From Octopus bimaculoides (taxonomy: Eukaryota): a stretch of DNA of 42,060 nucleotides. The DNA is taken from the NCBI RefSeq assembly GCF_001194135.2, contig NC_068989.1, forward strand, positions 77,130,814-77,172,873, in the 5' to 3' direction. Shown piece after piece: positions 1,443 to 42,025 of this stretch. Position numbers and translations under genes: made by a program. The notes under the pieces are model-generated. The model did no database searches, was not told the DNA's origin, and saw nothing but the letters and a program-made list of their open reading frames with translations. The first letter of the stretch is position 1. Each line of letters starts with the position of its first letter.

Positions 1443-2100
1443 GGCGCAGGAGTGGCTGTGTGGTAATTAGCTTGCTTAAAGGCGGGAAGATGGCTGAATC
1501 GTTAGCACGCCGGGCGAAATGCTTAGCGGTATTTCATCTGCTGTTACGTTCTGAGTTCAAATTCCGCCGAGGTCGACTTTGCCTTTCATTCTTTCGGGGT
1601 CGATAAATTAAGTACCAGTTACGCACTGGGGTCGATGTAATCGACATAATACCTTTGTCTGTCCTTGTTTGTCCCCACTTTCTTTAGCCCCTTGTGGGCA
1701 ATAACGAAATAAGTAGCTTGCTTACCAACCACATGGTTCCGGGTTCAGTCCCACTGCGTGGCACCTTGGGCAAGTGTCTTCTACTATAGCCTCGGGCCAA
1801 CCAAAGCCTTGTGAGTGGATTTGGTAAACGGAAACTGAAAGAAGCCCGTCGTATATATGTATATATATATATATATATATACATGTGTGTATGTGTGTTT
1901 GTGTGTCTGTGTTTGTCCCCCCACCATCACTTAACAACCGATGCTGGTGTGTTTACGTCCCCGTAACTTAGCGGTTCGGCAAAAAGAGACCGATAGAATA
2001 AGTACTAGGCTTACAAAGAATAAGTCCTGGGGTCGATTTGCTCGACTAAAGGCGGTGCTCCAGCATGGCCGCATTCAAATGACTGAAACAAGTAAAGAGG
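1443..2100 (+). mobile_element. tRNA-derived SINE family A (CORE-like head, internal microsatellite), interrupted by a nested SINE
   Basis: A-box-like GGCTGTGTGGTAA and B-box-like GGTTCAGTCCC, followed by ACCTTGGGCAAGT (as in the MIR/CORE domain start). Internal (TA)n(TG)n at about 1850-1910 and 3' end GGCGGTGCTCCAGCATGGCCGC...GAAACAAGTAAAG. Homologous copies at 15581, 33489 and 37141. Confidence 0.85.
1479..1709 (+). mobile_element. tRNA-derived SINE family B (Meta-domain-like), young copy nested in family A
   Basis: Head GGCGGGAAGATGGCTGAATCGTTAG and B-box GAGTTCAAATTCC. Central GTCGACTTTGCCTTTCATTCTTTCGGGGTCGATAAATTAAGTACC resembles the MetaSINE/Sauria central domain (from memory). Flanked by a 15-bp TSD with one mismatch (1464-1478 / 1710-1724). 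Confidence 0.85.
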
Positions 2101-2264
2101 AAAAAAAAATAAAGTCGAATCATAGTTTTCCGTTCCGCTTCTCTGTCTCCCTCAATTTCTCTATTCCTCTCCCCACGCTACATCTCCTTTCCACCTTTCT
2201 ACAATGCCAGGTATATTCAAAGGTGCAATTTTACTGTGATGCAGAGTCACAATATATATACTCT

Positions 2265-3586: not shown

Positions 3587-3799
3587 GAGGGTGTCCACAA
3601 AGTCTGGGTACATTGGGGATTAAGACATACTTTAAGAAATTTTTATTTCTTATATTTAATTGTATATGTTATGATCTTATTTACTCCATGTACCCACATG
3701 GGGATTAACACATACTTTAAGAAATTATTGTTTCTTACATTTAATTGTTTATGTTATGATTTTATATACTCCATGTACCCAGACTTTGTGGACACCCTG
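3587..3799. mobile_element. Tc1/mariner-type MITE with internal tandem duplication
   Basis: Perfect 26-bp TIR AGGGTGTCCACAAAGTCTGGGTACAT (3588-3613) and its reverse complement (3773-3798). TA on the left (3585-3586). The interior is two diverged 85-86-bp units (3610-3695, 3696-3780). Confidence 0.85.
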
Positions 3800-15266: not shown

Positions 15267-15340
15267 GAAAGTACGACAGTAAGTTTAATGAAAGTACGAC
15301 GGCAAGTTTAATGAAAGTACGACAGCAGGTTTAATGAAAG
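15267..15340. repeat. 23-bp minisatellite, 3.2 copies
   Basis: GAAAGTACGACAGTAAGTTTAAT repeated at 15267, 15290 and 15313 with few substitutions. Confidence 0.9.
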
Positions 15341-15580
15341 GACGTGGTGTATTAGATATTTAATCTACAGTAGATTTCAGCTTGTTGATTTTGCGAGCGA
15401 AATTTACTGAATATGCCGTATATTCACGCTCGACTCTGCCATATTGCCATCCCCATTTCTCTGTTTATGCGCACACAGACACGCGAGCAATGTGTGTGCT
15501 TATTGTTGTATGAGTCTGCTTTTGTACATATAAGTGCATGTGTGTGTGTATTATTACTGGACAAGTTTGATAAAAGATAT

Positions 15581-16147
15581 GACGCAGGAGAGGTTGTATG
15601 GTAAGTAGCAAGTAGCTTGCTTACCAACCACATGGTTTCGGGTTCAGTCCCACTGCGTGGCATCTTGGGCAACTGTCTTCTATTATAGACTCAGGCCGAC
15701 CAAAGCCTTGTGAGTGGATTTGGTAGACGGAAACTGAAAGAAGCCAGTCGTATACATATATATATATATANNNNNNNNNNNNNNNNNNNNNNNNNNNNNN
15801 NNNNNNNNNNNNNNNNNNNNNNNNNNNNNNNNNNNNNNNNNNNNNNNNNNNNNNNNNNNNNNNNNNNNNNNNNNNNNNNNNNNNNNNNNNNNNNNNNNNN
15901 NNNNNNNNNNNNNNNNNNNNNNNNNNNNNNNNNNNNNNNNNNNNNNNTTTGTGTTTGCCCCCCCCACCACATCGCTTGACATCCGATGCTGGTGTGTTTA
16001 CGTCCTCGTGACTTGGCAGTTCGCCAAAAAGAGACTAATAGAATAAGTACTAGGCTTAAAAAGAATATATCCTGAGGTCAATTTGCTCGACTAAAAGATG
16101 GTGATCCAGCATGGCCGCAGTCAAATGACTGCAACATGTAAAAGAAT
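15581..16147 (+). mobile_element. SINE family A copy (gap in internal microsatellite)
   Basis: Near-colinear with 1443-1478 plus 1725-2100, without the nested insert. N-gap 15771-15947 sits in the internal (TA)n. Confidence 0.85.
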
Positions 16148-16437
16148 TAAAAAAAAATAGAACTGATCTTGAAACGAGGAATTTCCATGAGACGTGAACT
16201 TAGTGGTGTGTGTATGCAAGCATAAATTCATGCAAACAGACACACGCGCGCGCAGACACGCACACACACAAACACAGATACATAGAGAGAGAGAGAGAGA
16301 GAAAGTGAGATTAAAGTACAAAATATGGAATATTGATAGTGATTCTCTATTTTTTTTTAATTACTTCAAGTAATTATTAAAAAAAAAACTTTTCAAAATA
16401 TACACAGAAAAGTATTTTCTGTGTATATGAATAAACA

Positions 16438-18948: not shown

Positions 18949-18999
18949 ATTATGCATACGTGTAGTCCGCATATTATGCATACGTGTAGTCCGCATATT
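18949..18999. repeat. 24-bp perfect tandem duplication
   Basis: ATTATGCATACGTGTAGTCCGCAT twice. Confidence 0.9.
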
Positions 19000-22312: not shown

Positions 22313-23882
22313 NNNNNNNNNNNNNNNNNNNNNNNNNNNNNNNNNNNNNNNNNNNNNNNNNNNNNNNNNNNNNNNNNNNNNNNNNNNNNNNNNNNNNNNN
22401 NNNNNNNNNNNNNNNNNNNNNNNNNNNNNNNNNNNNNNNNNNNNNNNNNNNNNNNNNNNNNNNNNNNNNNNNNNNNNNNNNNNNNNNNNNNNNNNNNNNN
22501 NNNNNNNNNNNNNNNNNNNNNNNNNNNNNNNNNNNNNNNNNNNNNNNNNNNNNNNNNNNNNNNNNNNNNNNNNNNNNNNNNNNNNNNNNNNNNNNNNNNN
22601 NNNNNNNNNNNNNNNNNNNNNNNNNNNNNNNNNNNNNNNNNNNNNNNNNNNNNNNNNNNNNNNNNNNNNNNNNNNNNNNNNNNNNNNNNNNNNNNNNNNN
22701 NNNNNNNNNNNNNNNNNNNNNNNNNNNNNNNNNNNNNNNNNNNNNNNNNNNNNNNNNNNNNNNNNNNNNNNNNNNNNNNNNNNNNNNNNNNNNNNNNNNN
22801 NNNNNNNNNNNNNNNNNNNNNNNNNNNNNNNNNNNNNNNNNNNNNNNNNNNNNNNNNNNNNNNNNNNNNNNNNNNNNNNNNNNNNNNNNNNNNNNNNNNN
22901 NNNNNNNNNNNNNNNNNNNNNNNNNNNNNNNNNNNNNNNNNNNNNNNNNNNNNNNNNNNNNNNNNNNNNNNNNNNNNNNNNNNNNNNNNNNNNNNNNNNN
23001 NNNNNNNNNNNNNNNNNNNNNNNNNNNNNNNNNNNNNNNNNNNNNNNNNNNNNNNNNNNNNNNNNNNNNNNNNNNNNNNNNNNNNNNNNNNNNNNNNNNN
23101 NNNNNNNNNNNNNNNNNNNNNNNNNNNNNNNNNNNNNNNNNNNNNNNNNNTTGCACTGCTTTCGTTGCAGACAGTTAATATCAGGCAGGTGGTGAGACAA
23201 CGAATAGACAACATATGTTACGAAAAATAGTACTGCATTTCTGTGGATTGTTTTTAAATAAAACAGCATGAAATGCATTACTGATCACAAACGAGATGTG
23301 TTGCGATCGTGGTATGTGTTTATTTATAATATCACGATGCAAGACGTGCTGTGAATAATATTAAGTTTATACACCGTTTCTGTATACGTGAATACTTTAA
23401 TAATTATAAAATAAAACAGTATTTTAGAGATATTAGAGTTGATAATGATGATGGTTTTGTGAGTTAATAACGTCAATGATAATGAAGCGAAAGGGATAGT
23501 TAACGATCCCATTACACGGAATGCAATGTAAATATGTATTTGCCAAAGAATGAATTTATAAGCGATGTCTATCTTTATATGCCAGTGTGTTTGTTAGTCA
23601 GCAAAATATAATCAACTGGCGTTAGTATAAACAATGTCTGTAAAATAAGATGTTGGTCTGATGTGAAGACGAGTGTGTTCTGAGGTTTCAAACAGGGCAG
23701 TGTGCACTTCTTCTTCTTGACTTCGTTTTCCTCTGTGTGTGAGTGCATACACTCATGCATACATACACACATACATACATAGGTTCATACATAGGTTCAT
23801 GCATACATATAAACATACATGCATGTATACATGCATATGCATTTATAGCGTAAGATATAATATTATATATACCGGTTTCAAA

Positions 23883-24084
23883 TTTTGGCACATGGTCAAC
23901 AATTTTAGAGTTGAGATAACTTGATTAAATCGGCAGTAGTACTTTACTGGTGCTCATTTTATCGTCCCCAACATGATGAACGGCAAAGTTGAGCCGTGTG
24001 GAATGTGGACTCAGGACGTAAAGACGGGCAAAAGGCCGTTAAGTATTTTCTCAGCCATGATGACGATTCTGCCACCTAGCCGTC
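23883..24084 (-). mobile_element. SINE family B copy
   Basis: Tail TTTTGGCACATGGTCAACAATTTT, central ACTGGTGCTCATTTTATCGTCCCCAACATGATGAACGGCAAAGTTGA and head GACGATTCTGCCACCTAGCCGTC, all reverse complements of family B motifs. Confidence 0.7.
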
Positions 24085-24371
24085 ATATCGCCGGCTTAAT
24101 ATTACAATATAACAATAATTATAATGAAGTTATTCACTGATATCGAAAAAGTGAAAACAAGCAATGTTAAATCTCTGAACGAGGTGTTAACAGTAACTGC
24201 ACGATAAAGTGAAGTATATTTGCCATTTAAATGTGGCTGACCCCTAAGGGTGGATGTTACTGTTGCTTTTAGCCCCAGGAGAACATCTCCTCCAGCTGGC
24301 TTATCGACACATATCTGTGTCCTGTCTATTTTTGCCAAGGGAAGTTATCCTTCCCATCTTGATCTGCGATA

Positions 24372-24416
24372 CGTACGGACCCGAGTTTCGGGGTTATTTC
24401 CCTTCTTCAGCGTACG
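24372..24416 (-). ncRNA. Minimal type I hammerhead ribozyme (second copy, stem II variant)
   Basis: Reverse complement reads CGUACG-CUGAAGA-AGGG-AAAUAA-CCCC-GAAA-CUCGG-GUC-CGUACG, identical to 25283-25327 except C for U at the stem II base. Confidence 0.8.
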
Positions 24417-25282
24417 ATAATCGCCGACCTTTGATGAGAATGACAATCCCTTGGCAATATATAAGTCTTTTTCCAGACAGGACACAGATATGTGTCGATA
24501 AGCCAGCTGGAGGAGATGTTCTCCTGGGGCTAAAGGCAACAGTAACATCCACCCTTAGGGGTCAGCCACATTTAAATGGCAAATATACTTCACTTTATCG
24601 TGCAGTTACTGTTAACACCTCGTTCAGAGATTTAACATTGCTTAATANNNNNNNNNNNNNNNNNNNNNNNNNNNNNNNNNNNNNNNNNNNNNNNNNNNNN
24701 NNNNNNNNNNNNNNNNNNNNNNNNNNNNNNNNNNNNNNNNNNNNNNNNNNNNNNNNNNNNNNNNNNNNNNNNNNNNNNNNNNNNNNNNNNNNNNNNNNNN
24801 NNNNNNNNNNNNNNNNNNNNNNNNNNNNNNNNNNNNNNNNNNNNNNNNNNNNNNNNNNNNNNNNNNNNNNNNNNNNNNNNNNNNNNNNNNNNNNNNNNNN
24901 NNNNNNNNNNNNNNNNNNNNNNNNNNNNNNNNNNNNNNNNNNNNNNNNNNNNNNNNNNNNNNNNNNNNNNNNNNNNNNNNNNNNNNNNNNNNNNNNNNNN
25001 NNNNNNNNNNNNNNNNNNNNNNNNNNNNNNNNNNNNNNNNNNNNNNNNNNNNNNNNNNNNNNNNNNNNNNNNNNNNNNNNNNNNNNNNNNNNNNNNNNNN
25101 NNNNNNNNNNNNNNNNNNNNNNNNNNNNNNNNNNNNNNNNNNNNNNNNNNNNNNNNNNNNNNNNNNNNNNNNNNNNNNNNNNNNNNNNNNTTTCACTTTT
25201 TCGACATCAGTGAATAACTTCACTGGAAAAAGACTTATATATTGCCAAGGGATTGTCATTCTCATCAAAGGTCGGCGATTAT

Positions 25283-25327
25283 CGTACGCTGAAGAAGGGA
25301 AATAACCCTGAAACTCGGGTCCGTACG
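25283..25327 (+). ncRNA. Minimal type I hammerhead ribozyme
   Basis: Stem I CGUACG (25283-25288) pairs with CGUACG (25322-25327). Core CUGAAGA is 25289-25295. Stem II is AGGG-AAAUAA-CCCU (25296-25309), then GAAA (25310-25313), short stem III AC-UCGG-GU, and GUC triplet (25319-25321) with predicted cleavage after 25321. All core nucleotides are in consensus order and spacing. Confidence 0.85.
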
Positions 25328-26077
25328 TATCGCAGATCAAGATGGGAAGGATAACTTCCCTTGGCAAAAATAGACAGGACACAGATATGTGTCGATAAGC
25401 CAGCTGGAGGAGATGTTCTCCTGGGGCTAAAGGCAACAGTAACATCCACCCTTAGGGGTCAGCCACATTTAAATGGCAAATATACTTCACTTTATCGTGC
25501 AGTTACTGTTAACACCTCGTTCAGAGATTTAACATTGCTTAATAATTATAATGATATATTTACATACTATCATTCTGTATATGTATATATGCGTATAGAA
25601 ATATGTCTTCATCTTTTATCTTTTACATTTTCTACGCATTGAACTGGCGGGGCACACTTATATTTATTCAGCTTGGTACCTATACTATTGAAACGTTTAA
25701 GGAAGCGCTGAGTTACGGGTACCTGATCACACCAACTCCGTTGCTCGATACGCACACGCACATAGATATATATTTAGAATATATTATATATTCGTATGTA
25801 AAAATAGTAATAATGATAATATCATCAGCAACGTTATAATAAAGATCTGGAAATAGAGTTAAATCGAATATGTAGCCTAAAAAACAAATATATTTCCTAT
25901 TTAGAGTAGGCACATTAGGTAGGATAAAAAAAAATCAGAAAAGCACCGCACACATCCTTCGTAAAACGCTTTTAATACAGTAGAAATACAAGAGCACCGC
26001 AACCAACCACGGCGCATATCCAAGGCGCACAGAGCTGCGCTCGGTAGTACGGTGTAAGAACGTGATATGAATAAGAC

Positions 26078-26126
<49 letters not shown>

Positions 26127-26145
26127 CAACAACAACAACAACGAC

Positions 26146-26182
<37 letters not shown>

Positions 26183-26200
26183 GTAATAATAATGATAATA
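26078..26200. repeat. (TAA)n with (CAA)n core
   Basis: Read directly; abuts the RLE fragment. Confidence 0.95.
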
Positions 26201-26443
26201 TGTCGGCATTATAAAATCAAAACTGCTGACAAATGGTATAAACACAATCCTGAAGCTGTGACTGAGGGAGAAAATGTATCGATTCTCTGGGACTTCCCCG
26301 TACATACCGACAAGGTTATAAAAGCTAATAAACCGGATATTATTATAAAAGATCAGACAAAGAAGATGTGTTTATTAATTGACATGAGTATTCCCTGCGA
26401 TCATAATATAGCGGCGAAAGAATTTGACAAGATCATTAAATAT
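26201..26443 (+). pseudogene. Restriction-like endonuclease (RLE) domain fragment of an R4/Dong-type non-LTR retrotransposon
   Basis: Open frame CRHYKIKTADKWYKHNPEAVTEGENVSILWDFPVHTDKVIKANKPDIIIKDQTKKMCLLIDMSIPCDHNIAAKEFDKIIKY has the WYxHxP, ILWDF, NxPD, LIDxxxP and KExxKxxKY motifs of the PD-(D/E)xK RLE. Truncated at both ends. Confidence 0.85.
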
Positions 26444-26739
26444 ACAAACTCTCGTATATTGTATGTATGTATGTATGNNNNNNNNNNNNNNNNNNNNNNN
26501 NNNNNNNNNNNNNNNNNNNNNNAGTTTCGGGGATAATGATTCACTTGTTTCTTGTTTTGAGACAACTCTCCTTTCAATTGATCTGAACAGAGACCGAAAT
26601 GGCGAAGAAAAAGTATAGAAGGATAAGTGAAGTAGAAAATTAAGATGAAAAGTGAAAGAAGAAAAGGTGGAGGACGAGGAAGAGGAGAGGAAAATAGTGG
26701 AAGAGCAGTACGAAGATGTGAAAGACGAAAGTAGTTGTT

Positions 26740-32344: not shown

Positions 32345-33488
32345 CACGTCTGTACATTTATATTCATGAAATTGTTTTCAGTATTTCAATTTAGACTTTA
32401 TATTTTTTAGTACAGGTAATGCTATGGCTTAGCAGAGTATTCCTCCGATTAAAAGCATTGCATTGTTTGTGTATTCCGACCAACAAACTTTAATACAAGC
32501 CTCAGAGTTCAAAAAAGATGAATCAATATTTAATGTAGTATTTCTTAATTCCAAGTTTCTAATCATACCAATGTCGATGTTAATGTATGCCTTTGCAAGC
32601 TAATACAAGAATAGAAATGGTGTTTTCCTCAATGATTTATACAACTTTGAAATTACAATTTATATGCTAATATTGCCAAATCGAATAACATAAATGTGTT
32701 TGTAATGTGTAATTACGAAATCATTTTTTATTAGAGAGGTTACTGCAATTAATATAAACTATCATTACAATCACTTTCGTCTAGATTGAATTGACATGTT
32801 TTATTACATCCAACAAATCGTTAAAAAGAAAAAAAAATAAGATAAATTTTCCAAATAAAATCAAAAATTTGCTTAGCTTCTTCAGATAAAGACATCCTTC
32901 ATCACTTTGAAAATTAATATTATTGGTAATAATTTTATAGCTATTCTGAGAGAAATGTTTCCACTACAAAGACTGGAAGTATTAATATAATGTTATGCTG
33001 CTAGGAAAATAAAAACAAATGGAAACAATCAAGAAATTGGCGATCTGAATACTCAGCAGGAAAATAAAACAGAAAACAAGCGCAAATATGATTATTTTGT
33101 GACTTTCAAATCTGATAACGCTGTCAATATTAGTTTTACACAAAATTTATATTCGTTGTTGAAAAGAAGACACTAATATAAAACATATGTTTAAGTAATG
33201 GTTTCTGATGTAGGCACATAACTATTGTTTCCTAGGGGTGTTTTAGACACGCGATTATTTATTTATAAACATCGGGGAAATATTAAACTTAAAACTTCAC
33301 TGCATAATTGTAGCCAGCATGAATCAAAATTCAGCTACTATTATTGTTATTTGCGTGTGTTTGACTATCAGTATTAGTTCTATTAGACAAACAAACACAC
33401 ACATGCACACACACACACACACACGCACACACACACACACCCACACCCACAGACACACACACACACACACACACATATATGTATATAC

Positions 33489-33645
33489 TACAGGCTTCTT
33501 TCAGTTTCCGTCTATCAAATCGACTCACAATTTTTCGACCGATTCCAGGATATAGTAGAAGAGACTTGCCCAAGGTACTACACTGAGACTGAACTCGGAA
33601 CCATGTCTTTGAGAAGCAAGCTTCTTACCACACAGACACTCATAT
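33489..33645 (-). mobile_element. SINE family A 5' half
   Basis: Reverse complement GAGTGTCTGTGTGGTAAGAAGCTTGCTTCTC..ATGGTTCCGAGTTCAGTCTCAGTG..ACCTTGGGCAAGTCTCTTCTACTATA...GACGGAAACTGAAAGAAGCC runs into (TA)n(TG)n. Confidence 0.8.
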
Positions 33646-35020: not shown

Positions 35021-35490
35021 ACTATGATAAAAAGTGAGCCCAAAAGAGTCCCTAGCAGGACATGACTGTTGACTTTGCTGGACTATATGCTGATTGCACC
35101 GATAACATTTTTTTTTTTTTTTTTCACTAGGAAATGCTTTACCAAGTGTAGCAATTTATCACGGATTTCTAAGTTGGATAATTTTTACAGGAGGATATCA
35201 TGCGTGGGCCTGCTGAACGCTGTTGAAGACATGATACATGACATCAGATAACGGACCTTAACCCAAAGCTTTAAGGACATCATCGATGTGATAAAAAAAA
35301 AAAAACTGTGTTAAGCAGTCTGTGCCACAGCAAAACCATGCTCTTTGGAATTTAGAAAGCTATGGCTTTCCAGGAAGTCAGTTATACACCATTTCACCAC
35401 ATTTTCAAAACATTTGATGGTATGGAAGGTGAGTGAAATTGGTCGATTGACCGGTTTCCCTTTTTCGGTATACAGCTTGAGTCTAAAGTA
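35021..35490 (-). pseudogene. LINE reverse transcriptase fragment (CR1/L2/Jockey group)
   Basis: Minus strand reads EKGKPVNRPISLTFHTIKCFENVVKWCITDFLESHSFLNSKEHGF, then HIDDVLKALG..DVMY, HDILL*KLSNLEIRDKLLHLVKHFL and KVNSHVLLGTLLGSLFII. These correspond to NYRPISLT, QHGF, DVIYLD and SGVPQGxVLGPLLF. Confidence 0.8.
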
Positions 35491-36078
35491 TTTTCCTAGA
35501 TTGGCGGCAACATTACAAGTTCGTGTTTTCGTTTCGTTTAGAGGAATTACAACCAAACGTACTTTATATACAAAACAATATATGTACGTTCCTGCGCGAC
35601 GATATATAACGGAGATTTCTAAAAAATTATCATATTATTTTGATGCGTAAAATAAGCAAATGTAGAAACGTGAAATAATACATCATTTGACATTTTATTT
35701 TTTCCGTGAGCACTATGCGCAAAGAAATATAATAATATCGGATACGAATGAGAAAAAAAGAAAAATAATAAAAAAGAAAAGGAGACATAAATGTATGCCG
35801 TATCTCCTATGTCAGAAAAGACCGCCACATTATTATGGCATGATTTAGAAGGTCAAGGTGTATACGTTGTATTCGAAATGACTTATGTGAACGCATACAT
35901 TGTTTTGATAAGAACAAATACACACTGTGAAAAATGTATTTGCAGTTGTTCTCTGCAAACCTTAATGTGAATAGACACACACACGTGCAAATACATACAT
36001 ACGCATATATGTATATATATACATGCATATAAACAAAGGAACACACATTTATGTATATTGAATTTGAAAAGGAATATA

Positions 36079-36128
<50 letters not shown>

Positions 36129-37140
36129 NNNNNNNNNNNNNNNNNNNNNNNNNNNNNNNNNNNNNNNNNNNNNNNNNNNNNNNNNNNNNNNNNNNNNNNN
36201 NNNNNNNNNNNNNNNNNNNNNNNNNNNNNNNNNNNNNNNNNNNNNNNNNNNNNNNNNNNNNNNNNNNNNNNNNNNNNNNNNNNNNNNNNNNNNNNNNNNN
36301 NNNNNNNNNNNNNNNNNNNNNNNNNNNNNNNNNNNNNNNNNNNNNNNNNNNNNNNNNNNNNNNNNNNNNNNNNNNNNNNNNNNNNNNNNNNNNNNNNNNN
36401 NNNNNNNNNNNNNNNNNNNNNNNNNNNNNNNNNNNNNNNNNNNNNNNNNNNNNNNNNNNNNNNNNNNNNNNNNNNNNNNNNNNNNNNNNNNNNNNNNNNN
36501 NNNNNNNNNNNNNNNNNNNNNNNNNNNNNNNNNNNNNNNNNNNNNNNNNNNNNNNNNNNNNNNNNNNNNNNNNNNNNNNNNNNNNNNNNNNNNNNNNNNN
36601 NNNNNNNNNNNNNNNNNNNNNNNNNNNNNNNNNNNNNNNNNNNNNNNNNNNNNNNNNNNNNNNNNNNNNNNNNNNNNNNNNNNNNNNNNNNNNNNNNNNN
36701 NNNNNNNNNNNNNNNNNNNNNNNNNNNNNNNNNNNNNNNNNNNNNNNNNNNNNNNNNNNNNNNNNNNNNNNNNNNNNNNNNNNNNNNNNNNNNNNNNNNN
36801 NNNNNNNNNNNNNNNNNNNNNNNNNNNNNNNNNNNNNNNNNNNNNNNNNNNNNNNNNNNNNNNNNNNNNNNNNNNNNNNNNNNNNNNNNNNNNNNNNNNN
36901 NNNNNNNNNNNNNNNNNNNNNNNNNNNNNNNNNNNNNNNNNNNNNNNNNNNNNNNNNNNNNNNNNNNNNNNNNNNNNNNNNNNNNNNNNNNNNNNNNNNN
37001 NNNNNNNNNNNNNNNNNNNNNNNNNNNNNNNNNNNNNNNNNNNNNNNNNNNNNNNNNNNNNNNNNNNNNNNNNNNNNTATACATATATAAATCATATATA
37101 TATGTATATATATATATATTTATATGTATATATTCGTGAG

Positions 37141-37300
37141 TTTGTATTTATTCCCCCCCCCAGATCGCTTGACAACAGACGTAAGTGGGTTTACGTCCCC
37201 GTAACTTAGCGGTTAGGCAAAATAGCCTGATAGAATAAGTATTAAAGCGGTGCTGCAGCATGGCCGCAATCAAATGATTGAAATAAGTAAAAGAATAAAT
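37141..37300 (+). mobile_element. SINE family A 3' half with internal deletion
   Basis: ATCGCTTGACAAC...TTTACGTCCCCGTAACTTAGCGGTT.GGCAAAA...GATAGAATAAGTA then directly AAAGCGGTGCTGCAGCATGGCCGC. Lacks the GGGGTCGAT segment present at about 2010-2050. Confidence 0.8.
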
Positions 37301-41293: not shown

Positions 41294-41364
41294 TTCTTGA
41301 TTTATTTCTTTGATTCTTGATTTATTTCTTTGATTCTTGATTTATTTCATTGATTCTTGATTTC
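41294..41364. repeat. 20-bp minisatellite, about 3.5 copies
   Basis: TTCTTGATTTATTTCTTTGA unit repeated. Confidence 0.9.
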
Positions 41365-42025
41365 TTTCGTCATAGCTTGAGGTGTTGTATTTCGCAATTG
41401 GTGTTTTTTTTTGTTTTGTTTAATGCATGTAATCATATTGTTGTAACTTTTACACATTTAGCATTGCTATTTTTTCTCCTACGAAGTTCTATTCTAAAAA
41501 TAGTTAGCCAAACACTCAGTTTAAAATTTCCACAATATGATAAAAGATTAAATTATATATATACTTGTGTGTGTTTTATGACGATGTGTGTGTAAACGAG
41601 TGGATGTCTGTGCGTATGTGCGTCAGAGTGAGTGTGTGTAACTAAAACGCACATACACGTACATACATACAAACACTTCTTTATTACGCAGCAAGTAAAG
41701 CTATAAATAACAGATGCGAATATTTGGTTACAAAGCATTTGGAGTATGCGTGCTTCGTTGACAGTACGAACATTTAGAGAGGAAGTATGATGACACAACG
41801 AGTCAAAATGAATTTCTAGTGAGATATTATTTTTGTAATTAGCCTCCCTTAAAAAATCAGGTTTGATAAAGCTTCTGTTTGAAGAAACAATCGTATTTAT
41901 ATTGTACTAGTCGTTAATAATGTTGATGATGGGTGCCACAAAACTGCGGCTATGCAAGGCGGTGCTGTTGGTCAAAATAAGGATATAAATGGTGACACAC
42001 GTATACGCACGCGAACGCACATACA

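What the first reader, a model, noticed from the sequence alone, without database searches (positions are those of the whole stretch)
24125..25540. 352-nt circularly permuted monomer in inverted plus tandem arrangement with TSD: candidate retrozyme / circRNA-forming retroelement
Seen: the minus-strand monomer 24125-24476 runs CTGGAAAAAG...CATTGCTT-GT-TTTCAC...AACTTCA. The forward copy has the end segment TTTCAC...AACTTCA (25191-25222) joined directly to the start CTGGAAAAAG (25223), a head-to-tail junction. Compared segments differ at only 3 positions in about 350, and AATAATTATAATGA flanks both ends (24114-24127, 25541-25554). No coding capacity recognised. Established: non-LTR retrozymes are tandem monomers of a few hundred nt with one hammerhead each and yield circular RNAs; Penelope-like elements form direct and inverted partial tandems. 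Inference: a recent insertion reverse-transcribed from a multimeric or circular RNA and mobilised in trans.
Basis: partly seen in the sequence, partly recalled or inferred. Interest (0 to 1): 0.88.

Follow-up and report, generated by a model that had tools for sequence, protein, structure and literature searches.

The report
Hammerhead retroelement insertion with Penelope footprints
A young insertion of a 352-base non-coding repeat that carries a hammerhead self-cleaving ribozyme and shows the insertion scars typical of Penelope-like retrotransposons: a cephalopod example of a known kind of element (a non-LTR "retrozyme"), sitting in a badly assembled stretch.

Summary
An inverted copy (24125-24476, minus strand) and a forward copy (25191-25540) of a 352-nt unit differ at 3 positions. 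Their endpoints are permuted, and an exact 14-nt duplication flanks both ends.

- **Third piece.** 24475-24647 is a third, partial copy joined head-to-head to the inverted one. It is 100% identical to 25372-25544, including 4 nt of flank. The two sides of the gap do not overlap, so the copy number and any true tandem array remain unresolved.
- **Hammerhead.** Each full unit holds a complete type I hammerhead (25275-25333 on +, cut after 25321; 24424-24366 on -). It has the same architecture as four experimentally validated retrozyme hammerheads. Rfam models do not report it.

The circular unit is predicted to be unusually well folded (z = -7.4). It has no coding capacity.

The 34 extra nt at one end only, the head-to-head inverted copy, the AT-rich target and the duplication match the published insertion signature of Penelope-like elements. 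That signature includes the "tail" between two reverse-transcription start sites and priming from both strands.

Verdict: a recent insertion of a non-autonomous, Penelope-mobilised hammerhead element, a new member of a known kind. Circular RNA is plausible but untested.

The parts
24114..24127 (.). Left copy of the 14-nt target-site duplication AATAATTATAATGA. Its last 3 nt (TGA) are also the complement of the last 3 nt of T, giving a 3-nt microhomology at the priming site.
24125..24158 (-). 34-nt 'tail' on the minus strand (GT + T = GT-TTTCAC...AACTTCA). It lies beyond the ...CATTGCTT end and is present at this end of the insertion only. The same T sequence lies directly upstream of B in the forward copy.
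   Evidence: For the tail concept see PMC8557442, PMC3846280 and PMC11167929.
24159..24476 (-). Inverted copy of the 318-nt body B. Together with the tail it is exactly one 352-nt unit.
   Evidence: (I1: 318 nt, 99%)
24366..24424 (-). Type I hammerhead motif of the inverted copy. Core CUGAAGA is at 24410-24404. The predicted cut lies between 24378 and 24377. The base of helix II is an A.C mismatch (24390).
24475..24643 (+). Third, 5'-truncated forward copy (B150-318). It joins head-to-head to the inverted copy at 24476/24477 with a 2-nt AG overlap. It is followed by AATA (24644-24647) and then the gap. It is 100% identical to 25372-25544.
   Evidence: (D4, I2)
24648..25190 (.). Assembly gap (543 N, length only estimated). 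Its edges do not overlap. Its content, and so the number of units, is unknown.
25191..25222 (+). T segment (32 nt) joined directly to the start of B. This is the head-to-tail junction at 25222/25223. In head-to-tail context, T and B1-10 form a hairpin across the junction.
25223..25540 (+). Forward copy of body B (318 nt). It ends ...CATTGCTT directly at the right target-site duplication, with no tail.
25275..25333 (+). Type I hammerhead motif. Helix I is 25283-25288 with 25322-25327 (6 bp), plus a distal stem 25275-25279 with 25329-25333 beyond an internal loop. The core CUGAAGA is 25289-25295. Helix II is AGGG/CCCU with loop AAAUAA (25296-25309). GAAA is 25310-25313. Helix III is AC/GU with loop UCGG (25313-25320). 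C17 is at 25321, and the predicted cut lies between 25321 and 25322.
25541..25554 (.). Right copy of the 14-nt target-site duplication

Best explanation
This is one recent insertion of a short (352-nt), non-coding, hammerhead-bearing retroelement: a non-LTR retrozyme, meaning a non-autonomous derivative or passenger of Penelope-like elements (PLEs). The genome looks like that of an octopus. A PLE reverse transcriptase/GIY-YIG endonuclease supplied in trans most likely made the insertion.

Proposed course; steps 1-4 and 6 are inferred from the anatomy and from published PLE biochemistry, step 5 is partly shown:
1. The enzyme cut both strands of the AT-rich target AATAATTATAATGA 14 bp apart.
2. 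Both 3'-OH ends primed reverse transcription of element RNA.
3. On the bottom strand, synthesis began at the ...CAUUGCUU site and gave the forward arm (25540 leftwards).
4. On the top strand, synthesis began 34 nt further downstream at ...AACUUCA, with 3 nt of primer/template microhomology. This gave the inverted arm with its 'tail' (24125 rightwards).
5. The two cDNA ends met head-to-head and were joined through a 2-nt microhomology at 24476/24477. The junction itself is shown in the sequence.
6. Fill-in of the staggered cut produced the 14-nt duplication.

Both arms contain the same 3' part of the unit, and both orders B->T and T->B occur. The template was therefore more than one unit long: a read-through multimer, a circle, or two RNAs with a template jump.

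The hammerhead (cut after 25321) would process multimeric transcripts to unit length. By analogy with characterised retrozymes, those units could then be ligated into 352-nt circles. That part is inferred.
For: Shown here:
- Exact anatomy and near-identity of the copies.
- A 14-nt duplication found only at the two ends.
- A complete type I hammerhead in each full unit, with 0.03 expected per shuffled window.
- The same helix lengths as validated coral, mussel and axolotl retrozyme hammerheads, whose cut sites the same descriptor recovers.
- A common structure with 96.6% of cells paired, 7 of 10 pairs showing compensatory change, and 0 of 500 shuffles as good.
- Circular unit MFE of -116.8 kcal/mol against -77.7 +/- 5.3 for shuffles, z = -7.4.
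- Unit GC of 42.6% against 33.4% for the window, with no ORF or Pfam domain.
- No tRNA-like part.
- Copies 99.1-100% identical, while the window's other dispersed repeats are 76-93% identical, so the insertion is young.

From papers:
- PLE insertions are partial tandems, often with an adjacent inverted 5'-truncated copy and a 30-40-bp tail at one end. They break short-read assemblies (PMC8557442).
- A rotifer Penelope has an inverted pLTR, a 31-bp tail and a 9-bp duplication, and pLTRs suffice for mobilisation in trans (PMC3846280).
- A purified PLE protein cuts and extends both strands, prefers AT-rich DNA and starts reverse transcription at two internal sites. The tail is the sequence between those sites (PMC11167929).
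- Non-LTR retrozymes are ~150-450-nt type I hammerhead repeats of low GC, expressed as circles (PMC7229834). They are related to PLE pLTRs (bioRxiv 10.64898/2026.07.22.740005).
- PLEs make up ~6.8% of the Octopus vulgaris genome and include young families (PMC13282606).
Against: - Rfam covariance models report no hammerhead at gathering score, at E<=10 on 1.9 kb, or at E<=10 on the 75-nt motif alone.
- Pair 10.1-11.1 is A-U (forward copy) or A.C (inverted copy) instead of the usual G-C, and position 7 is A. Activity is untested.
- This is a single locus. There are no other copies in the window, and none could be retrieved from any collection available here. Family size, tandem arrays and the autonomous partner are therefore unknown.
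- The centre of the insertion is an assembly gap. The sequence before the gap duplicates the right end of the element including 4 nt of flank, which may be an assembly error.
- No PLE ORF was recognised in the ORF lists of the window; no profile scan for reverse-transcriptase or GIY-YIG domains was run over it.
Confidence: 0.78

Rival explanations
1. This is an ordinary 5'-truncated insertion of an autonomous Penelope-like element. B and T are merely its pseudo-LTR and tail, the coding body is missing or hidden in the gap, and there is no independent 352-nt element and no circle.
For: The architecture (inverted pLTR with tail + direct pLTR + duplication) is exactly that of autonomous PLEs (PMC3846280; PMC8557442). 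Most PLE insertions are 5'-truncated. PLEs are abundant in octopus. Gap length is only an estimate. A 100-codon open frame without ATG runs through B-GT-T on the sense strand, and PLE pLTRs do contain the start of the ORF.
Against: Inside contig B, T is followed directly by the first base of B (25222/25223). Inside contig A, B is followed by GT-T. The cycle therefore closes at 352 nt with no room for a 2.5-3-kb body. The hammerhead is of the canonical retrozyme type (6-bp helix I, 4-bp helix II, 2-bp helix III with a tetraloop), not the minimal form described for animal PLE pLTRs (PMC4209133; PMC7229834). The open frame has no Pfam match.
Confidence: 0.12
2. The structure is largely an assembly artefact. 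One or two real copies of a repeat were mis-joined or placed twice by a short-read assembler and gap closer, creating the apparent foldback, the permuted junction and the extra copy.
For: The window is a draft scaffold with 14 gaps. The 173 nt before the gap are an exact second copy of 25372-25544, including 4 nt of flank. The inverted copy is exactly one unit long, as a collapsed cycle in an assembly graph would be. PLE structures are known to break short-read assemblies.
Against: The inverted and forward copies differ at three positions, so they are distinct sequences. Each unusual junction (duplication/tail, B-GT-T, head-to-head, T-B, B/duplication) lies inside a contig and needs its own supporting reads. 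Other gaps in the window show no such flank duplication. The result reproduces, in detail, a biological signature the assembler cannot know about: a tail of 34 nt, a duplication and microhomologies. An artefact could change the copy number but not the nature of the element or its hammerhead.
Confidence: 0.07
3. This is a foldback or MITE-like DNA transposon with ~318-bp terminal inverted repeats, or a local inverted segmental duplication, unrelated to reverse transcription.
For: The arms are 318 nt and 99% complementary (I1), flanked by a direct duplication.
Against: The inverted repeat is not terminal on the left: 34 extra nt lie outside it and equal the sequence upstream of B in the other arm. 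To my knowledge, a 14-bp duplication fits no cut-and-paste superfamily. The unit contains a hammerhead and a closed head-to-tail order. There is no transposase and there are no other copies in the window.
Confidence: 0.03

Closest known systems
Non-LTR retrozymes of animals (Cervera & de la Pena 2020, PMC7229834), e.g. mussel Mg353 and axolotl Rtz353
   Same: - The unit size is 352 nt, against 353 for the mussel and axolotl constructs.
- There is one type I hammerhead per unit with identical helix lengths. Helix III is AC-NNNN-GU, as in mussel (ACGCGCGU) and axolotl Ax353 (ACACGUGU).
- A weakened pair at the base of helix II also occurs in axolotl Ax353, which has a U.U mismatch there.
- GC is below 45%, there is no coding capacity, and the predicted circle is strongly self-paired.
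   Different: - No long tandem array is visible: at most 1.1 contiguous units plus a partial copy.
- The copies are arranged head-to-head, with a target-site duplication and a one-sided 34-nt tail. These features are not discussed for retrozymes in the papers read.
- The core reads CUGAAGA with A10.1-U11.1.
- No sequence similarity outside the core.
- No expression or circularity data.
Penelope-like elements: pseudo-LTR / tail / inverted-copy insertion structure (Arkhipova et al. 2013, PMC3846280; Craig et al. 2021, PMC8557442; Frangieh et al. 2024, PMC11167929)
   Same: - A head-to-head inverted 5'-truncated copy lies next to direct copies.
- A 30-40-bp tail is present at one end only (34 nt here).
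- There is a short target-site duplication in AT-rich DNA.
- There are two 3' end points, consistent with two reverse-transcription start sites.
- There are microhomologies at the junctions.
- A hammerhead lies in the repeated part.
   Different: - There is no RT/GIY-YIG ORF. The whole unit is 352 nt.
- The duplication is 14 bp, against 8-10 bp in the rotifer examples read.
- The hammerhead is canonical rather than the minimal dimer-dependent form typical of animal PLE pLTRs.
L1 twin priming (inversion with 5' truncation), cited from my own knowledge
   Same: Both target strands prime reverse transcription. The result is an inverted and a direct segment joined by microhomology and flanked by a duplication.
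   Different: In L1 twin priming the two segments come from adjacent, non-overlapping parts of one RNA and there is a poly(A) end. Here both arms contain the same 3' region, there is no poly(A), and the end points are 34 nt apart.

Membership tests
Hammerhead ribozyme, type I | Conserved core C3 U4 G5 A6 N7 G8 A9 / G12 A13 A14 / A15.1-U16.1 / H17, surrounded by helices I, II and III, with helix I open | tested here: met
   CUGAAGA 25289-25295, GAAA 25310-25313, GUC 25319-25321. Helices are 6 bp, 4 bp and 2 bp. Chance expectation is 0.03 per window.
Hammerhead ribozyme, type I | Match to the curated covariance models (Rfam Hammerhead families) | tested here: not met
   No hammerhead hit at gathering score, at E<=10 on 1.9 kb, or at E<=10 on the 75-nt motif. 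No positive control could be run through the same tool.
Hammerhead ribozyme, type I | Structure shared with experimentally active members, with compensatory changes | tested here: met
   Alignment A1 with coral, mussel and two axolotl retrozyme hammerheads gives 96.6% of cells paired and 7 of 10 pairs with change on both sides. No shuffle out of 500 matches it, and all slid registers score far lower.
Hammerhead ribozyme, type I | Self-cleavage at H17 | not testable with these tools
   Needs in-vitro transcription. A10.1-U11.1 (or A.C) instead of G-C may lower activity.
Non-LTR retrozyme | Short unit (~150-450 nt), low GC, one type I hammerhead, no ORF, no LTR/PBS/PPT | tested here: met
   352 nt and 42.6% GC, with one motif per unit. 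Stop-to-stop frames are at most 103 codons with no Pfam hit.
Non-LTR retrozyme | Head-to-tail tandem copies (dimers to multimers) in the genome | tested here: inconclusive
   Both permuted junctions exist inside contigs (24157-24158 and 25222/25223). However, only ~1.1 contiguous units are seen, and the gap edges do not join.
Non-LTR retrozyme | Many dispersed copies in the genome | not testable with these tools
   No animal genome collection is on hand. There are no further copies in the window and none in the protein, metagenome or viral collections.
Non-LTR retrozyme | Expressed as unit-length linear and circular RNA | not testable with these tools
   Only a prediction is possible: the circular fold has z = -7.4.
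Penelope-like element (insertion made by PLE machinery) | [quoted passage not shown] | tested here: met
   34 nt (GT+T) at the left end only, 24125-24158. Definition.
Penelope-like element (insertion made by PLE machinery) | Adjacent inverted 5'-truncated copy (head-to-head) and/or partial tandem | tested here: met
   Head-to-head junction at 24476/24477 and T-B junction at 25222/25223.
Penelope-like element (insertion made by PLE machinery) | Short target-site duplication, AT-rich target | tested here: met
   14-nt AATAATTATAATGA, the only two exact copies in the window.
Penelope-like element (autonomous member) | ORF with PLE-type reverse transcriptase and GIY-YIG endonuclease | tested here: not met
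   There is no such ORF in the element or its contigs. The cycle closes at 352 nt.

The most novel reading that the evidence does not exclude
The inverted arm is exactly one unit long. It starts and ends at the same phosphodiester (T32|B1), which lies in a hairpin that forms only in head-to-tail RNA. This could be the footprint of one full turn of target-primed reverse transcription around a 352-nt circular retrozyme RNA. If so, the locus would be insertion-level evidence that a Penelope enzyme uses hammerhead-derived RNA circles as templates, priming from both target strands at its two start sites.
Probability: 0.2. Interest if true: 0.7.

Novelty: new member of a known kind. Interest (0 to 1): 0.45.

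Why it matters
Non-LTR retrozymes are thought to be mobilised by Penelope-like elements. The papers read here rest that idea on co-occurrence and on sequence similarity to pseudo-LTRs, and they name the mobilisation mechanism as open (bioRxiv 10.64898/2026.07.22.740005).

A young retrozyme insertion that still shows the duplication, the one-sided tail and the head-to-head arm is the kind of footprint that links the two directly. It also gives concrete predictions:
- two start sites 34 nt apart;
- a staggered cut of 14 bp;
- a template longer than one unit.

The finding adds cephalopods to the hosts, where I found no report of hammerhead elements in the searchable literature. It also shows that Rfam-based annotation can miss such ribozymes. 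The value is limited by resting on one locus in a gapped draft assembly.

Tried and rejected
- **Rfam.** Three searches (whole window at gathering score; 1.9 kb and the 75-nt motif at E<=10) gave no hammerhead, only chance hits to mir-9428 and algC.
- **Other copies via the protein collection.** I used the 101-aa antisense ORF that crosses both head-to-tail junctions as a handle: nothing found. An exact look-up of the 93-aa window ORF also found nothing on record.
- **DNA pattern scans for the hammerhead region.** Two metagenome scans and one viral scan gave 0 matches. No animal genome collection is available, so copy number, empty sites and the autonomous partner could not be examined.
- **SINE idea rejected.** There is no tRNA-like part and no A-rich or simple-repeat tail.
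- **Coding idea rejected.** There is no endless frame on the circle and no Pfam hit.
- **Systematic gap-flank duplication rejected.** None of the other 13 gaps shows it.
- **Neighbouring ORFs.** ORFs at 26192-26477 and 35311-35556 looked retrotransposon-like by eye, but neither gave a Pfam match. A six-frame Pfam scan of a region failed because of stop codons.
- **MFE fold of the 63-nt motif.** It gives helices I and II but pairs part of the core instead of forming helix III, so it is not by itself proof of the catalytic fold.
Full report
**1. What is in the sequence**

The window is a draft scaffold with 14 runs of N. The finding spans two contigs, 23151-24647 and 25191-26477, separated by 543 N. 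Define B = CTGGAAAAAG...CATTGCTT (318 nt) and T = TTTCAC...AACTTCA (32 nt).
- The minus strand of 24476->24125 reads B-GT-T, which is 352 nt.
- The plus strand of 25191-25540 reads T-B.
- The B copies differ at two positions: B87 (25309 T versus 24390 C) and B210 (25432 G versus 24267 A). The T copies differ at one (25205 C versus 24142 T). All three differences are transitions.
- AATAATTATAATGA occurs exactly twice in the window, at 24114-24127 and 25541-25554, directly against the element ends.
- No other copy of the unit exists in the 42 kb.

**2.

The last 173 nt before the gap (24475-24647) are a third, plus-strand, 5'-truncated copy (B150-318). It is joined head-to-head to the inverted copy at 24476/24477 through a 2-nt AG overlap. 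It is 100% identical to 25372-25544, including the first four flank letters AATA.

The gap edges (...GCTTAATA | TTTCAC...) share no overlap. A tandem junction would read GCTT-GT-TTTCAC. Continuity across the gap is therefore not supported, and three structures remain possible:
- (a) The pre-gap copy is the same DNA as the right end of the element, making the insertion about 521 bp. Contig B's left part would then come from another allele or copy.
- (b) The pre-gap copy continues GT-T-B, making the insertion about 873 bp. The four letters AATA would then be a wrong extension at a repeat fork.
- (c) More units lie in the gap.

A 352-bp indel polymorphism between alleles (a) and (b), arising by recombination between direct repeats, would produce exactly the contigs seen. 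This is speculation.

All 13 other gaps abut microsatellites and show no flank duplication, so this gap is caused by the repeat itself. Each unusual junction lies inside a contig. The arms also differ at three positions. The inverted pair and both permuted orders are therefore unlikely to be pure artefacts. A tandem array as such is not shown.

**3. The ribozyme**

Rfam finds no hammerhead, even at E<=10 on the 75-nt motif alone. By eye, and then by a descriptor scan, each full unit holds a complete type I hammerhead:

5'-GCGAU-UAU-CGUACG-CUGAAGA-AGGG-AAAUAA-CCCU-GAAA-C-UCGG-GUC|CGUACG-U-AUCGC-3'

It occupies 25275-25333, with the cut after 25321. The inverted copy has it at 24424-24366.
- All invariant core positions are present.
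- Helix I is 6 bp, followed by an internal loop and a 5-bp distal stem.
- Helix II is 4 bp with a 6-nt loop.
- Helix III is 2 bp with a tetraloop.
- The scan finds this one hit in the window, against 0.03 expected per shuffled window.
- With a relaxed rule for the base of helix II, the scan also finds the inverted copy. The same scan recovers the annotated cut sites of four experimentally validated retrozymes, from coral, mussel and axolotl (two), whose sequences I took from the supplement of PMC7229834.
- The helix III segment has the same length as in mussel and in axolotl Ax353.
- In an alignment of the six motifs, the common structure pairs 96.6% of cells. Seven of ten pairs show change on both sides, and no shuffle out of 500 does as well. 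Slid registers drop to 16-44%.

Deviations:
- Position 7 is A, which is allowed.
- Pair 10.1-11.1 is A-U in the forward copy and A.C in the inverted one, instead of G-C. One of the three differences between the arms falls exactly here. Ax353, a cloned and transcribed construct, has a U.U mismatch at that place, so the position tolerates weakening.

Activity is untested. The MFE fold of the isolated motif gives helices I and II but not helix III.

**4. The unit as an RNA**

- Closed into a circle, the 352-nt unit has an MFE of -116.8 kcal/mol. Dinucleotide shuffles give -77.7 +/- 5.3, so z = -7.4.
- Helix I continues into a long imperfect stem.
- GC is 42.6%, against 33.4% for the window.
- No frame is open around the circle. 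The longest stop-to-stop stretches are 100 codons (sense, no ATG) and 103 codons (antisense), and neither has a Pfam match.
- No tRNA-like part is present.

These are the traits listed for non-LTR retrozymes: ~150-450-nt repeats, type I hammerhead, GC below 45%, non-coding, and highly self-paired circles (PMC7229834).

**5. The insertion footprint**

The right arm ends at ...CATTGCTT against the duplication. The left, inverted arm ends 34 nt further along the unit (GT+T). Its last 3 nt match the target. That extra sequence is the one found upstream of B in the other arm. The published Penelope signature matches point by point:
- Partial tandems are often accompanied by an adjacent inverted 5'-truncated copy and by a 30-40-bp 'tail' at only one end. 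These structures cause problems in short-read assemblies (PMC8557442).
- A rotifer element has an inverted pseudo-LTR, a 31-bp tail and a 9-bp duplication. Pseudo-LTRs are sufficient for mobilisation in trans (PMC3846280).
- A purified PLE protein cuts and extends both DNA strands, prefers AT-rich targets and initiates reverse transcription at two internal RNA sites. The tail is the stretch between those two sites. Hammerhead cleavage is not needed for insertion in vitro (PMC11167929).

**6. Mechanism proposed**

The steps are inferred from sections 1-5:
- Nicks are made 14 bp apart on the two strands of AATAATTATAATGA.
- Each 3'-OH primes cDNA synthesis. One starts at the ...CAUUGCUU site and the other at ...AACUUCA.
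- The two cDNA ends are joined by 2-nt microhomology at 24476/24477.
- Fill-in creates the duplication.

Both arms carry the same 3' region, and both orders B->T and T->B occur. The template therefore exceeded one unit. It could be a read-through multimer, a circle, or two linear RNAs with a template jump from an RNA 5' end at B1 to the second start site.

Two observations lean slightly towards a head-to-tail RNA:
- The inverted arm is exactly one unit long, with both its ends at T32|B1.
- A hairpin forms across T|B1 only in head-to-tail context (z = -1.7, not significant).

The same two facts are also what template jumping, or a collapsed assembly cycle, would give. Neither cDNA 5' end lies at the hammerhead cut site. 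The template was therefore not a freshly cleaved linear monomer.

**7. Comparison and membership**

- The element works like, and meets the sequence-level criteria of, a non-LTR retrozyme. Tandem multiplicity is inconclusive. Copy number and circular RNA are untestable here.
- It is not an autonomous PLE, because it has no ORF and the cycle closes at 352 nt. Its insertion does bear PLE hallmarks.
- The hammerhead is the canonical retrozyme type rather than the minimal type of animal PLE pseudo-LTRs.
- PLEs are abundant in octopus, at 6.8% of the O. vulgaris genome with young families, so a partner is plausible.
- The host assignment (octopus-like) rests on my recognition of the SINE-like repeats in the window, not on a tool result.

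**8. Novelty and score**

Retrozymes in molluscs, and their link to PLEs, are published. I found no report of hammerhead elements in cephalopods. I also found no description of tail, duplication or head-to-head footprints for retrozyme insertions in the papers read. This is a new member of a known kind, with some value as a mechanistic footprint. Its value is limited by being one locus in a gapped draft. Interest 0.45.

Noticed in passing
window 1710-2111, 15610-16159, 33427-33627, 37095-37244: A dispersed SINE-like repeat family, 76-93% identical between copies and in both orientations. It is much older than the 99-100% identical hammerhead units. By eye it resembles the abundant tRNA-derived SINEs of octopus genomes, which is my only basis for the host guess.
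   Followed up: partly
window 26192-26477 (+), about 650 nt downstream of the insertion and running into the gap at 26478: An open frame reading ...ILWDFPVHTDKVIKANKPDIIIKDQTKKMCLLIDMSIPCDHNIAAKEFDKIIKY. From memory it looks like a conserved C-terminal region of invertebrate retrotransposon proteins. It has no Pfam match and is not a GIY-YIG or RT motif.
   Followed up: partly
all N runs of the window except 24648-25190: The other 13 gaps all abut microsatellites, mainly (TA)n, (CA)n, (GA)n and CATA-type repeats. This suggests a short-read assembly that broke at simple repeats.
   Followed up: yes
window 25268-25342 and 24366-24424: Rfam 15 covariance models miss this hammerhead entirely. A simple descriptor finds it and places it in the same architecture as validated retrozyme ribozymes. 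Annotation that relies on Rfam alone would overlook such elements.
   Followed up: partly
circular unit built from 25191-25540 plus GT: A 100-codon open frame without ATG lies on the sense strand. It runs from about B140 through B318-GT-T into B1-95 and stops in loop 2 of the hammerhead. It could be chance, or a relic of the ORF start that PLE pseudo-LTRs contain. It has no Pfam hit.
   Followed up: partly
window 25196-25232 (T|B junction): A hairpin (CAGUGAA/UUCACUG extended by CUUUUUC/GGAAAAAG) forms only when T is followed by B. The 3' end point of the tailed arm lies in it. This recalls the stem-loop at the reverse-transcription start sites of an Anolis PLE. It is not statistically significant on its own.
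   Followed up: partly
window 3614-3781; 15267-15344; 18949-18999; 41294-41368: Short tandem duplications with periods of 85, 23, 24 and 20 nt, in 2-4 copies each. Their meaning is unknown.
   Followed up: no
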